This document shows, in pieces, positions 13,195 to 24,947 of a stretch of 64,000 nucleotides of DNA. How positions within the stretch are numbered: the stretch's first letter is position 1; every line of letters begins with the position of its first letter. The translations under genes were made by a program, and so were the position numbers. Below the pieces are notes generated by a model that did not search any database, was not told the origin of the DNA, and saw only the letters and a program-made list of their open reading frames with translations. The DNA lies in assembly GCA_950097015.1 (NCBI GenBank), contig CATNEN010000029.1, positions 6,076,001 to 6,140,000 of the forward strand, written 5' to 3'. This stretch comes from Macrostomum hystrix. Its lineage: Eukaryota > Animalia > Platyhelminthes.

Positions 13195-16100
13195 ATGAAA
13201 GTTTGCACGCTGCTGCTGCTACTGCTAGCGCTCTGTGGAGCAGCCAGTGTTGTTGATGGTGCTAGCGTAAAGGTACCAGTCGCCAGTAAGTCATCATAAG
13301 TACTTATTTCATTTGCACTGATAATATGTTCTAACAACTGTGTATTTCATGATTTCTGTACGAGATTTAATCACTAAATAATTTATTGAACCGGATTGGG
13401 CTCCAGCGAAAGTAGCTACAGCTTTTGTGGGGCGCATCTGAAGGCTACCGTACGGCTGTTCAGTCCTGTACGGTGTACGGACTGGGAGGGGGCGCCACCA
13501 CCCTTTATTAATCCCAGCTATCCATTTGATAGGTGGGTGAACTTAGCAATGCAGATTTAAATGTCTTATTAAAGGATATAGATTGTTCTTGTGGTGTCGG
13601 GAACGAACCCCCGACCTTTATGTCATGAGTCCGATGCTCTGACCACTACTCCCTACAACTCCCTATACAAGGCTACAAACCGATACAACCCGAGTGAATA
13701 AGTTCGAGAGCTGTTATTTATCGGAAATTCATTCGTTCGAATTCCTTAAAGGTGCTCCGCAGTCTCAGCTATGCCAAATTAACAGGCGGCAGATCATGGA
13801 GGCTGCCCGCCGGTTCTACAAGGCGCAATACGATACTAAAGTGCTGCTGCTGAAGCTGCAAATCCGTCGCCAACAGCTGGCCGAGAAAAGACGTCGCTAC
13901 CAGCAGTTCTTGCAGAGAATGCGCCAAAGGCACCAGCGCAGAATTCGCCGGCGTATGCTGAGATTCAAGCGCCGAGCGCAAAAGGTTAGGAAGCTATTTA
14001 AGAGAAAACTCAGATACGTTACAAAAAGGTATCAGAGAAAAGTGATGCGGAAGTTGAAAGCAAAGCCGATGTCGAATCGAAGGCTTCGTTTGGTCCAGAA
14101 GGCTTTCTTCAGAAAGGGAATCATTTCTAAGAAAGCTGCCAAAATCGCCAGCAAGCCAATCAAACTGAAGACAAACGCGGTGCGCCGAGTAATTCGTGGA
14201 AGATCAATTTGCAAGTGCCGAAGACTTACTCGGGGTCTGCAAAAACTCAGGTCTCCACACATCAACCGTAAGGCAAGGTACATTATGAAGCAGTACCAGA
14301 GAAAGGTGAAGAGGAGAGTAAATAGACGATTGAGACAGCTGACAAAAATGACTCGGCGATACATAACTGAGCAGGTGGACCGTAAAATAAGAATGCTGCG
14401 TCTGCACAGATGTTGCAGAGGACGCGGAAAGCAGCATGTTCTGAAGCGCAGGATTAGAATACTTGTGAGGCGCTTCCGAAGTAGAGTTCAGAGAGTTCAG
14501 CGTGCTAGGAGACGCAGGATCACACGAACTGTCATTAGGCGCTACAGAAAGCCTCTTAGAAGAAAACTAAGAAGAATTCTTCGAAGAGTAAGGCGTCGAG
14601 GTGGCCGAAGAAGAATTCGACAATACAGCCGTCGAACTAGGCGTATTGTCAGAAAGATTTTGAGGAGAAGGCGATCAATTCGTAGAGTCATCAGAAGGCG
14701 AGTTTCTAGAAGGCGTTTGACTCGAAGACTTTCCAGAAGGCGATCAACTCGCCGAGTTTCTAGAAGGCGTTTGACTCGAAGACTTTCCAGAAGGCGATCA
14801 ACTCGCCGAGTTTCTAGAAGGCGTTTGACTCGAAGATTTTCCAGAAGGCGATCAAATCGCCGAGTTTCTAGAAGGCGTTTGACTCGAAGATTTTCCAGAA
14901 GGCGATCAACTCGCCGAGTTTCTAGAAGGCGTTGGAGAGTGAGGCGACGAGTTATATACCGTCGACCTTTCAGACCACGGCGAGTTACACGACGGTTTTC
15001 AAGAATTCGTCGAGTGATCAGAAAACACAGACGACTCGTTCAAAAGAGAAGAGTGGTATATCGGGCCGCAAAGTATGGTCGACGAGTGAGCAATAGTTTT
15101 AGGCCAAGGAAGTATCAGCAGAACAAGACAACCAGGCGTGTGATAAGAACGAAACCTATTCGCAAGCTCATTACCAAACGTAGACTGGTTAAGAAGCAGC
15201 GAAAGAATCAAAAGAAAATTAAAAGAGTTGGCAAAGTAGTAAAAAGAATAAAAGTCATTCGAGCGAGTGCGAGAAAACTGAAAAAAGCAAAAAATAATAA
15301 AAAAAATTCTAAACCCATTAGACGATTGAAAAACGTAAGAATTCAGAAGCAAAGTCGAATTATCAAGAATCGACTGACAAGGCCCAAAAAAATAGTATTG
15401 CGGCGCACTGGACGTCGAAGGATACTTGTGAGGCGCACTGGACGTCGAAGGGTACTTGTGAGGCGCACTGGACGTCGAAGGGTACTTGTGAGGCGCACTG
15501 GACGTCGAAGGGTACTTGTGAGGCGCAATGGACTTCGAAGGGTACTTGTGAGGCGCACTGGACGTCGAAGGGTACTTGTGAGGCGCACTGGACGTCGAAG
15601 GGTACTTGTGAGGCGCAATGGACTTCGAAGGGTACTTGTGAGGCGCACTGGACGTCGAAGGGTACTTGTGAGGCGCACTGGACGTCGAAGAGTGTTCGTG
15701 AGGCGCTCTGGGCGCCGAAGGGTCTACCGAAGAAGGCACATCAAGATCAGCAGCACCAGGGTCATAAAGAGAGTACAGCACTTGGTTGCTCAAGTAAGGC
15801 GAGCTTTGCGCAGCAGTTTGGCTAAAAGACGGATTGTTCGACGCATCCGAACGCGTCGAGTAGCACTTAGACGACGTCTGCGAAGAATCGTTGTCAAGAG
15901 GCGTGCTCTAAAACGACGTATCGCCTCGATTCAGGCAAGACGAGCTCGCCTAATCAAGCGAATTCGCCAGCTGAGACATAGGAAAATAAAAATTATAAAG
16001 TCAAAGAAGGCTCCATCTAAGCGAATCGCATTGAAGGTTTCAATTAGACGCAGGACCGTTCGGATTGAGAAGCGCGTCAGCCAGATCGCAAAGCGCATCT

Positions 16101-24947: not shown

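What the first reader, a model, noticed from the sequence alone, without database searches (positions are those of the whole stretch)
13195..24947. Giant secreted polycation protein fused to WSC carbohydrate-binding domains
Seen: joining GT-AG exons gives ~2160 aa: a signal peptide, ~1700 aa dominated by R/K with V/I/L and almost no acidic residues (roughly 40-50% R+K by eye, not computed), an abrupt acidic linker (TESAYATDENTLNTE..EDYKTAEE), two WSC domains and an S/T/V/G-rich tail. Known: protamine-like composition normally belongs to nuclear proteins; WSC domains are extracellular glycan binders; a very large K/R-rich secreted protein (Mlig-ap1) is part of the Macrostomum adhesive. Inference: this is a secreted structural or defence polymer (glue, mucus, rhabdite, egg-shell or antimicrobial coat) whose polycation could condense with polyanions while WSC domains bind glycans. 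I do not recognise this domain architecture.
Basis: partly seen in the sequence, partly recalled or inferred. Interest (0 to 1): 0.88.

Follow-up and report, generated by a model that had tools for sequence, protein, structure and literature searches.

The report
Giant secreted arginine-rich flatworm protein
A Macrostomum-type flatworm transcribes and splices a real gene for a roughly 2,180-residue secreted protein: about 1,700 residues of almost purely positive charge joined to two sugar-binding WSC domains, a design that recalls flatworm glue proteins, has no detectable relative, and has no tested function.

Summary
On the + strand, a signal-peptide exon (13195-13285) is spliced to one giant exon (13752-19059). 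That exon is spliced through a 48-nt exon (19134-19181) to the first of two one-exon WSC domains. RNA contigs from three runs carry these joints; a DNA run does not.

The basic region is 1,713 residues: 30.5% Arg, 12.8% Lys, 27.5% Val/Ile/Leu, 0.9% Asp+Glu, net charge about +727.

Corrections:
- The window has one extra base at 18574 compared with all four runs, so the apparent stop is an assembly or allele artefact.
- I count 15 exons and about 2,180 residues.
- The basic region is not plain low complexity. It holds four diverged ~225-residue superrepeats with a heptad-like hydrophobic pattern.
- Variants among runs give pN/pS about 0.37.

No relative of the basic region was found.

My best reading is a gland secretion polyelectrolyte, working like Mlig-ap1 but not a member of that family. 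Tissue and function are untested. The scan noted similar WSC-polyarginine giants elsewhere in this genome. I class it as a new variant of a known kind.

The parts
13195..13285 (+). Exon 1: start codon and signal-peptide-like leader (MK, a hydrophobic run of about 15 residues, small residues at candidate cleavage sites); ends in phase 1
   Evidence: Sequence; no ATG in the 130 nt upstream that the RNA contig also covers; joint 13285>13752 in RNA runs X5, X9, X10 and not in DNA run X1
13286..13751 (+). Intron 1 (466 nt, GT..AG), containing a dispersed repeat at about 13434-13626
   Evidence: RNA depth is 0 at 13390-13589; DNA depth is more than doubled there, with loose ends at 13434, 13602 and 13626
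13752..19059 (+). Giant exon: about 1,713-residue polycationic region plus the start of the acidic linker. The window carries one extra base at 18574.
   Evidence: ORF; composition; base 18574 left out in all four runs, which removes the stop at 18584; 13 synonymous and 14 non-synonymous variants, pN/pS 0.37
14699..14933 (+). Tandem 27/54-nt repeat encoding alternating 9-residue units (RVSRRRLTR / RLSRRRSTR)
   Evidence: TRF: period 54, 4.4 copies, 98% matches; unit translations
15402..15723 (+). Tandem 30-nt repeat, 10.7 copies, encoding RTGRRRVLVR units
   Evidence: TRF: 94% matches; unit translations
15743..18493 (+). Four diverged superrepeats of about 220-240 residues (15743-16468, 16469-17119, 17120-17791, 17792-18493), helix-prone with a heptad-like hydrophobic pattern; a single Cys at one aligned position in three of the four
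   Evidence: Self-comparison scores 60-82 bits against at most 48 in shuffles; collinear alignment at 29-36% identity with 23 invariant columns; heptad test; AF2 with a 4-row alignment gives pLDDT 91.5 and three long helices, but single-sequence AF2 of 943 aa gives only pLDDT 41
18894..19059 (+). Acidic, non-repetitive linker at the end of the giant exon
   Evidence: With exon 19134-19181 it is 71 residues, 13 D/E against 6 K/R; no Pfam or Atlas match
19134..19181 (+). 48-nt phase 1-1 exon
   Evidence: Joint 19059>19134 in X5, X9, X10. The loose end after 19181 equals the first 24-30 nt of the exon at 19710
19710..19997 (+). WSC domain 1, one 288-nt phase 1-1 exon, 8 Cys
   Evidence: PF01822: E 9.8e-21, 74.2 bits, profile positions 2-82 of 82; joined to the 48-nt exon in RNA contigs
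20428..21182 (+). 28-nt satellite array (about 27 copies) inside the intron between the two WSC exons
   Evidence: TRF; the repeat finder D1
21272..21559 (+). WSC domain 2, one 288-nt phase 1-1 exon, 8 Cys
   Evidence: PF01822: E 2.4e-19, 69.7 bits, profile positions 2-82 of 82; splice sites and frame; not directly covered by the reads laid
21651..22786 (+). Six phase 1-1 micro-exons encoding the V/G/S/T-rich tail: 21651-21701, 21794-21841, 21991-22041, 22309-22359, 22570-22620, 22715-22786. Optional 33-nt exon at 22450-22482.
   Evidence: Canonical splice sites and open frame; tail composition V 17%, G 15%, S 14.5%, T 14%; no read evidence obtained
24160..24637 (+). Duplicate set of three micro-exons (24160-24210, 24421-24471, 24566-24637; optional 24301-24333) from a segmental duplication 1,851 nt downstream
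   Evidence: the repeat finder D2: a 300-nt match, 22284-22583 against 24135-24434, 97% identical; the copy continues to about 24640 by eye; frame
24925..24951 (+). Last exon (24925-24947), TAA stop at 24945-24947 and an AATAAA signal at 24946-24951 overlapping it
   Evidence: Sequence; model

Best explanation
This is a real, expressed, single protein-coding gene of a Macrostomum-type flatworm.

Shown: it encodes a leader peptide, a 1,713-residue region of net charge about +727, a short acidic linker, two WSC carbohydrate-binding domains and a V/G/S/T-rich tail built from symmetric micro-exons. The basic region consists of short Arg-rich tandem repeats followed by four old ~225-residue superrepeats that carry a heptad-like hydrophobic pattern.

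Inferred: the protein enters the secretory pathway of a gland cell. It can be stored there only when condensed with polyanions such as sulfated or acidic glycans or acidic partner proteins. Once released, it acts as a polyelectrolyte matrix or cohesive component. The polycation binds negatively charged surfaces, glycocalyx or partner polymers. The two WSC domains tie it to glycans. The tail acts as a flexible, possibly O-glycosylated spacer.

In this reading it works like the cohesive protein Mlig-ap1 (K/R-rich regions plus a lectin domain, neutralised by heparin-like polyanions) without being related to it. The gland type is unknown: prostate, adhesive, cement, shell or rhabdite.
For: Gene reality:
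- The joined frame has a single stop and every splice site is GT..AG.
- RNA contigs from three runs carry joints 13285>13752 and 19059>19134 and continue from 19181 into the WSC exon. The DNA run has none of these joints, and RNA depth is zero in intron 1.
- RNA depth is even across the giant exon in X5, about 224-314 where repeats do not confound it.
- Variants among runs are 13 synonymous to 14 non-synonymous against a neutral ratio of 1:2.9, giving pN/pS 0.37 and binomial p 0.009.

Secretory route:
- There is an N-terminal leader.
- There are two full-length WSC domains with 8 Cys each.
- All exons after the giant exon are phase 1-1, as is usual for shuffled extracellular modules.

Ordered polycation rather than junk:
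- The four superrepeats align collinearly at 29-36% identity, scoring 60-82 bits against at most 48 in shuffles.
- The heptad a/d contrast is 0.310 against 0.241 +/- 0.013 in shuffles, and 12.9% of windows exceed 0.5 against 1.4% in shuffles.
- AF2 on one superrepeat gives three long helices at pLDDT 91.5.

Analogy: Mlig-ap1 has more than 3,600 residues of K/R-rich regions (pI above 14) plus a C-type lectin domain. It is secreted, and heparin or fondaparinux block its cohesive function (PMC6410801). Mile-ap3 and Tmed-ap3 are a signal peptide plus giant basic low complexity (PMC9229212).
Against: - No expression site, secretion, polyanion binding or glycan binding was tested.
- No single molecule is shown to run from exon 1 to the WSC exons. 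The RNA contigs break at the tandem repeats.
- Exons after 19710 rest on splice-site logic and leftover contig lengths only.
- The helical model is not robust. Single-sequence AF2 of 943 residues gave pLDDT 41 and pTM 0.20. A Fourier test of hydrophobic periodicity was barely above its null. The region may be disordered without counter-ions.
- RNAi of ap1 and ap2 alone removes adhesive vesicles in M. lignano, so a third major glue protein is not required there.
- Six short peptides of this protein were not found in the text of the supplementary files (which include the footprint mass-spectrometry data) of PMC6410801. This is weak evidence because the species probably differs and K/R-rich proteins digest poorly.
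Confidence: 0.55

Rival explanations
1. It is a seminal-fluid (prostate gland) protein. The polycation and WSC domains fix or gel the ejaculate onto the partner's antrum wall or sperm surface, or otherwise manipulate the partner. This is a specific tissue version of the secretion reading, not exclusive of it.
For: [quoted passage not shown] By my count about 18 of the first 30 rows of Table S1 are of this type, judged from the hit names. Another 31 transcripts had no BLAST hit and 11 had no identifiable ORF, and the authors say some fragments may belong to the same protein (PMC5977470). RNA815_80.4, a 969-nt transcript whose sequence begins with a hydrophobic leader and which has two WSC domains, is prostate-specific by in situ hybridisation (PMC4490696). 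Mlig-pro46 and other seminal-fluid candidates resemble WSCD2 (PMC6953679).
Against: This is guilt by domain family only. Those prostate transcripts are about 0.7-1.4 kb and none is reported as basic or giant. No sequence link between this gene and any Mlig-pro transcript could be made here. The genome is apparently not M. lignano itself (other agents' notes).
Confidence: 0.3
2. It is a polyprotein precursor. Proprotein convertases cut the basic region at its many basic sites into cationic peptides that act as antimicrobial or defensive agents in mucus or on eggs. The WSC part would target or carry the precursor.
For: The basic region holds 28 R-X-[K/R]-R sites, 156 R-x-x-R sites and 315 dibasic pairs. 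Its Arg-rich segments interspersed with V/I/L resemble membrane-active peptides in composition (general knowledge, not tested).
Against: There are no regularly spaced cleavage sites flanking repeated peptide units, and no acidic spacer peptides of the kind usual in such precursors. The conserved unit is about 225 residues long with a heptad-like pattern, which suggests a long structural element rather than short peptides. Mlig-ap1 shows that flatworms do secrete intact giant K/R-rich proteins.
Confidence: 0.1
3. The basic region has no sequence-specific role. It is a repeat-driven expansion tolerated in a WSC-domain secreted protein, transcribed but functionally neutral or decaying.
For: Two recent tandem arrays lie in the exon. 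The window copy as assembled is frameshifted at 18574. No homolog was found in any database searched.
Against: The frameshift is absent from all four runs. A 5.3-kb frame stays open. The four superrepeats have diverged to about 33% identity while keeping the composition, the hydrophobic positions and almost no acidic residues. pN/pS is 0.37. RNA depth is substantial.
Confidence: 0.07
4. It is an intracellular nucleic-acid-binding protein (protamine- or histone-like), translated from an internal start without the leader.
For: The composition is protamine-like. There is an in-frame ATG at about 13796 early in the giant exon.
Against: All three RNA runs splice the leader exon onto the giant exon, with no read-through from the intron. 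The same frame continues into two disulfide-rich extracellular WSC domains. At about 1,700 residues the size is unlike any sperm nuclear basic protein.
Confidence: 0.03

Closest known systems
Mlig-ap1, the cohesive adhesion protein 1 of Macrostomum lignano (PMC6410801)
   Same: It is a giant secreted flatworm protein whose bulk is extremely basic K/R-rich sequence (pI above 14), joined in one chain to a carbohydrate-binding domain. The proposed electrostatic mode of action is blocked by heparin-like polyanions.
   Different: The basic regions of ap1 are described as G/R/K-rich low-complexity repeats flanking a C-type lectin, vWD-C8-TIL and 17-EGF core (5,407 aa). Here the basic region is Arg-dominated with 27% V/I/L and only 1.5% Gly, holds four ~225-residue heptad-patterned superrepeats, and the only folded domains found are two C-terminal WSC domains. 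The ap1 antibody peptide motifs (KSRKVN, SRKP, RKNRK) are absent. No homology is shown.
ap3 proteins of Minona ileanae and Theama mediterranea (Mile-ap3, Tmed-ap3; PMC9229212)
   Same: They have a signal peptide followed by thousands of residues of basic sequence, and are secreted by adhesive glands.
   Different: ap3 is GRK(HS) low complexity: K, R, G, H and S make up 88% of Tmed-ap3, with no other domain. This protein has G 1.5% and H 1.1%, many aliphatic residues, WSC domains and a micro-exon tail.
Small prostate-limited WSC proteins of M. lignano, such as RNA815_80.4 and several Mlig-pro transcripts (PMC4490696, PMC5977470)
   Same: They are secreted-type proteins of the same genus with two WSC domains. 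One possible source of the WSC exons is shuffling from this expanded family.
   Different: They are about 0.7-1.4 kb transcripts with no polycation. Their expression is known (prostate), whereas this gene's is not.
Polybasic cement proteins and complex coacervates of the sandcastle worm (from general knowledge, not checked here)
   Same: They are secreted polycations stored and set by pairing with polyanionic partners.
   Different: Those proteins are small, Gly/Lys/His/Tyr-rich and DOPA-bearing, from a different phylum, with no WSC domain.
Schistosome micro-exon genes (from general knowledge, not checked here)
   Same: Runs of short symmetric exons encode part of a secreted flatworm protein, so that any subset could be skipped in frame.
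   Different: Here micro-exons make only the C-terminal 173 residues of a giant protein. Alternative splicing was not shown.

Membership tests
WSC domain (Pfam PF01822) | Score above the Pfam gathering threshold over the whole domain | tested here: met
   74.2 and 69.7 bits against a cut-off of 27.8, profile positions 2-82 of 82 for both exons
WSC domain (Pfam PF01822) | Eight conserved cysteines per domain | tested here: met
   Eight Cys in each domain, at protein positions 1824-1897 and 1920-1993
WSC domain (Pfam PF01822) | Carbohydrate binding | not testable with these tools
   Needs a glycan array or pull-down
Flatworm adhesion protein 1 (Mlig-ap1 type) | Core of C-type lectin, vWD-C8-TIL and an EGF array | tested here: not met
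   Pfam scans of the giant exon in three pieces, the linker and both WSC exons gave only WSC. The micro-exon tail is too short to hold these domains.
Flatworm adhesion protein 1 (Mlig-ap1 type) | K/R-rich repeats of the ap1 type (published peptide motifs) | tested here: not met
   KSRKVN, SRKP and RKNRK each occur 0 times
Flatworm adhesion protein 1 (Mlig-ap1 type) | Expression in adhesive gland cells and presence in footprints | tested here: inconclusive
   Six peptides were not found in the text of the supplementary files (which include the footprint data) of PMC6410801, but the species probably differs. Expression was not testable.
Flatworm adhesion protein 3 (ap3, GRK/GRKHS type) | Signal peptide followed by G/R/K(/H/S) low complexity making up most of the protein | tested here: not met
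   A signal-type leader is present, but G is 1.5%, H 1.1% and V+I+L 27.5%. GRK occurs once and GRKHS never.
Protamines and sperm nuclear basic proteins | Small nuclear protein without a signal peptide | tested here: not met
   The leader exon is spliced on in all RNA runs, the protein has 2,180 residues and it is fused to WSC domains
Coiled-coil or helical-bundle repeat proteins | Heptad a/d hydrophobic pattern above chance | tested here: met
   Mean contrast 0.310 against 0.241 +/- 0.013 in shuffles, strongest at residues 632-1530
Coiled-coil or helical-bundle repeat proteins | Confident helical model reproducible across inputs | tested here: inconclusive
   pLDDT is 91.5 and pTM 0.69 with a 4-row alignment of internal repeats, but pLDDT is 41 for 943 residues as a single sequence. 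Foldseek gives only generic antiparallel coiled coils, with E of 0.003 or weaker.

The most novel reading that the evidence does not exclude
The four ~225-residue superrepeats form an extracellular coiled-coil or helical-hairpin rod with essentially no acidic residues. That would be an all-cationic helical polymer that folds and assembles only when polyanions neutralise it. Flatworm glands would then have a charge-switched material (glue, gel or ejaculate fixative) whose setting and release are controlled by counter-ions, and it would define a new family of WSC-anchored polycations that has expanded in Macrostomum.
Probability: 0.25. Interest if true: 0.8.

Novelty: new variant of a known kind. 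Interest (0 to 1): 0.62.

Why it matters
Giant secreted polycations are the least understood parts of flatworm temporary glue. The authors who described Mlig-ap1 homologues call the function of its K/R-rich region 'enigmatic' (PMC8621496), and short-read assemblies rarely recover such genes.

This locus gives a complete, transcript-supported gene model for a second, unrelated design: an Arg-rich region with a conserved long repeat and a heptad-like pattern, tied to WSC domains. WSC is the signature domain of the Macrostomum prostate secretome.

If the protein is a glue or cement component, it offers a new template for charge-switchable biomimetic adhesives. If it is a seminal-fluid protein, it would be an unusual player in post-mating conflict.

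The locus also shows that a one-base assembly error can hide a 2,180-residue protein from gene prediction.

Tried and rejected
- **A 28-nt intron at 18572-18599.** I first proposed this to bridge the stop at 18584; it restores the frame. I rejected it because RNA contigs read straight through and all four runs, DNA included, simply lack one base at 18574.
- **Homolog searches for the basic region.** The whole exon against candidates of 883-2,810 aa found nothing. Its last 211 residues against candidates of 333-1,060 aa found nothing. The ESM Atlas scored at most 0.62. A profile of the superrepeats against PDB sequences found nothing.
- **Acidic linker in the Atlas.** The best score was 0.73, in unnamed viral clusters, so it is not informative.
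- **WSC exon 2 against 1.84 billion representatives.** There were 7,486 hits, ranked by the number of WSC copies. None of the top 150 has a helix-type K/R region. The one K/R-rich hit, P0029, is a Cys-rich lectin/kringle mosaic and is unrelated.
- **Fourier test for a single hydrophobic period.** It did not exceed the shuffle null, apart from marginal values in two 200-residue windows. A register-free heptad test did exceed it.
- **Organism check through the Ty3-type ORF.** The best hits were only 65% identical (snail, sponge, metagenomes), so the species was not confirmed by me.
- **Literature.** No paper in the library couples Macrostomum with a basic WSC giant. Peptides of this protein are absent from the supplementary files of PMC6410801.
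- **tRNA origin of the intron-1 repeat.** ARAGORN found nothing.
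Full report
**What is there.** The + strand between 13195 and 24947 holds one coherent gene. A 1,630-codon open frame (13694-18586) stands out in the six-frame list. It is 31% Arg, 12% Lys, 27% Val/Ile/Leu and about 1% Asp+Glu, evenly along its length.

Upstream, an ATG at 13195 opens a 91-nt exon encoding a classic leader: MK, about 15 hydrophobic residues, then small residues. It ends at a GTAAGT donor. Downstream lie two ORF fragments that Pfam recognises as WSC domains.

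Joining canonical GT..AG sites gives a frame with only the terminal stop. Every exon after the giant one is phase 1-1. Each WSC domain is exactly one 288-nt exon covering the whole Pfam model, with E 9.8e-21 and 2.4e-19.

**Transcript evidence.** Thirteen public runs hold this stretch. I laid four of them on 13190-19189.

- Three RNA-type runs (X5, X9, X10) carry contigs that skip 13286-13751 and 19060-19133 exactly at the predicted sites.
- Their depth is zero in intron 1.
- After 19181 they continue with 24-30 letters identical to the first bases of the WSC exon at 19710.
- The DNA run X1 shows none of these joints.

Exon 1 is joined to the basic exon, and the basic exon is joined, through the 48-nt exon, to WSC domain 1.

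The limits are as follows. The contigs break at the two tandem repeats, so no single record runs from the leader to WSC. Exons beyond 19710 were outside the stretch I could lay. The leftover lengths of the contigs (682 nt in X5, 327 nt in X9) are compatible with the model but prove nothing.

**A correction to the sequence.** The stop at 18584 that ends the big ORF is not real. All four runs, including the DNA run, lack one base at 18574. Without it, the frame runs on into the ORF at 18618-19067.

I had first bridged the gap with a 28-nt intron, and the reads refute that. The giant exon is 13752-19059. The protein then has 2,180 residues in 15 exons. It would have 2,202 residues if two well-flanked 33-nt candidate exons, 22450-22482 and 24301-24333, are used; these are untested.

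**Anatomy of the protein.**
- Residues 1-31 are the leader.
- Residues 32-1744 are the basic region: net charge +727, with 28 R-X-[K/R]-R sites, 156 R-x-x-R sites and 315 dibasic pairs.
- A 71-residue acidic linker follows, with 13 D/E against 6 K/R.
- Then come two WSC domains with eight Cys each.
- Last is a 173-residue tail (V 17%, G 15%, S 14.5%, T 14%) encoded by micro-exons of 48-72 nt.
- The last three micro-exons are duplicated, introns included, 1,851 nt downstream at 97% identity.
- The stop codon overlaps an AATAAA signal.

**The basic region is structured, not random.** Its first part holds two young tandem arrays: 27/54-nt units encoding RVSRRRLTR/RLSRRRSTR, and 30-nt units encoding RTGRRRVLVR.

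Its second part (window 15743-18493) consists of four old superrepeats of 217-242 residues.
- Chunk-against-rest comparisons score 60-82 bits, against at most 48 for shuffled sequence.
- The four copies align collinearly at 29-36% identity. My estimate of chance identity from the composition is about 15%.
- The alignment has 23 invariant columns and many conserved aliphatic positions. One Cys position is shared by three copies.

A register-free heptad test shows aliphatic residues concentrated at a/d positions far more than in shuffles. The mean contrast is 0.310 against 0.241 +/- 0.013. Windows above 0.5 make up 12.9%, against 1.4% in shuffles. The signal is concentrated in the superrepeats.

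AlphaFold2 on one superrepeat, with the other three as alignment, gives three long helices (residues 2-81, 87-176, 182-233) at pLDDT 91.5 and pTM 0.69. Its only structural neighbours are generic antiparallel coiled coils such as Smc arms, the dynein stalk and the RipA N-domain, with E of 0.003 or weaker.

This model must be held loosely. The 943-residue stretch folded as a single sequence gave pLDDT 41 and pTM 0.20. A plain Fourier test was barely above its null. My reading is that the region is helix-prone, possibly a coiled-coil rod, and may need counter-ions to fold.

**Selection.** The runs differ from the window at 27 single-base sites in the giant exon: 13 synonymous and 14 non-synonymous, most of the latter conservative. 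With 1,351 synonymous and 3,953 non-synonymous sites this gives pN/pS 0.37. Fourteen or fewer non-synonymous changes out of 27 has binomial p 0.009 under neutrality. The sample is small and mixes runs of different labels, so it is supporting evidence only.

**Relatives.** Nothing resembling the basic region was found:
- in 5.8 billion clustered proteins within the length windows allowed;
- in the ESM Atlas;
- among PDB sequences.

The WSC exon has thousands of relatives, at up to 51% identity, but none of the 150 best carries this kind of basic region.

Earlier notes of this scan place the genome in Macrostomum, apparently a species close to M. lignano. They list other giant secreted polycation genes in it, including two 'WSC-polyarginine giants' on another piece and a followed-up two-exon poly-arginine gene. 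I could not read those loci or confirm the species myself. They are leads suggesting that this gene belongs to a lineage-specific family.

**What it most likely does.** Shown: a spliced mRNA encodes a leader, a +727 polycation, two WSC domains and a micro-exon tail. Inferred: secretion, storage with polyanions, and action as an electrostatic, glycan-anchored matrix.

The nearest functional precedent is Mlig-ap1. That protein has more than 3,600 residues of K/R-rich regions plus a C-type lectin, vWD and EGF core. It is secreted by adhesive glands and acts as the cohesive layer, and heparin or fondaparinux disable it (PMC6410801). Other precedents are the ap3 proteins of other flatworms, which are a signal peptide plus GRK(HS) low complexity (PMC9229212). 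This gene shares the logic of those proteins, a polycation plus a sugar binder, but fails the membership tests for both families.

A second lead comes from the literature on M. lignano reproduction. WSC-type hits dominate the annotated prostate-limited transcripts. RNA815_80.4, a 969-nt two-WSC transcript whose sequence begins with a hydrophobic leader, is prostate-specific. Many prostate transcripts had no hit or no ORF and may be fragments of larger genes (PMC5977470, PMC4490696, PMC6953679).

I therefore keep seminal fluid as the most specific tissue hypothesis, at about 0.3. Adhesive, cement, shell or rhabdite glands together are at least as likely. Processing into cationic peptides, neutral repeat expansion and an intracellular role are less likely, for the reasons given under the rival explanations.

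**Verdict.** The gene is a new variant of a known kind, the giant secreted polycations of flatworm glands. It has an undescribed repeat architecture and domain partner, and the scan has already met sister genes elsewhere in the same genome.

Noticed in passing
window 18574: The window has one base more (in a short A run) than the contigs of all four runs laid, DNA run included. This creates a false stop at 18584 and splits the giant exon into two ORFs. It is probably an assembly indel.
   Followed up: yes
window 20428-21182: A 28-nt satellite (about 27 copies, 94% matches) fills most of the intron between the two WSC exons.
   Followed up: no
window 13434-13626: A dispersed repeat lies inside intron 1. 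DNA-run depth is more than doubled there and contigs end with unrelated flanks. It looks tRNA/SINE-like by eye, but ARAGORN finds no tRNA.
   Followed up: partly
window 22284-22790 and 24135-24640: A segmental duplication (spacing 1,851 nt; 97% identity over the 300 nt matched, continuing by eye) copies three micro-exons with their introns. Between the copies lie a 69-nt inverted repeat pair (22845-22913 / 23069-23137, MITE-like) and a mariner-like transposase remnant on the minus strand (about 23652-23921).
   Followed up: partly
window 33895-38007 (-): An intact 1,370-residue Ty3/gypsy-type Gag-Pol ORF (RT, RNase H and integrase Pfam domains in its hits). The best database relatives are only 65% identical (the snail Batillaria, metagenomes).
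   Followed up: partly
window 16431: Run X9 alone lacks one base here, amid a cluster of substitutions (16409, 16428, 16439) shared with X10. This could be a contig error, a divergent allele or a paralog.
   Followed up: no
window 178-296 and 45003-45076: A 5S rRNA gene (117 bits) and a tRNA gene (66 bits, minus strand) by Rfam.
   Followed up: no
window 1449-1896, 4902-7404, 49590-51737: Long minisatellite-type arrays are open in several frames, for example PIPLPSSHPTPLIPSHSPH-type units over about 2 kb at 49590-51737.
   Followed up: no
window 25500-28000: G+C jumps abruptly from about 0.40 to 0.61-0.68 directly after the gene's 3' end. Other notes of the scan call this a Rep-carrying virus-like island.
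   Followed up: no
runs X9-X12 and X13: RNA-type runs labelled as two other organisms (C, D) hold 56-77% of the locus's words; the two laid (X9, X10) differ from the window by only about 0.3%. A sediment metatranscriptome holds 6% of the words. The labels may be strains or hybrids of one species.
   Followed up: no
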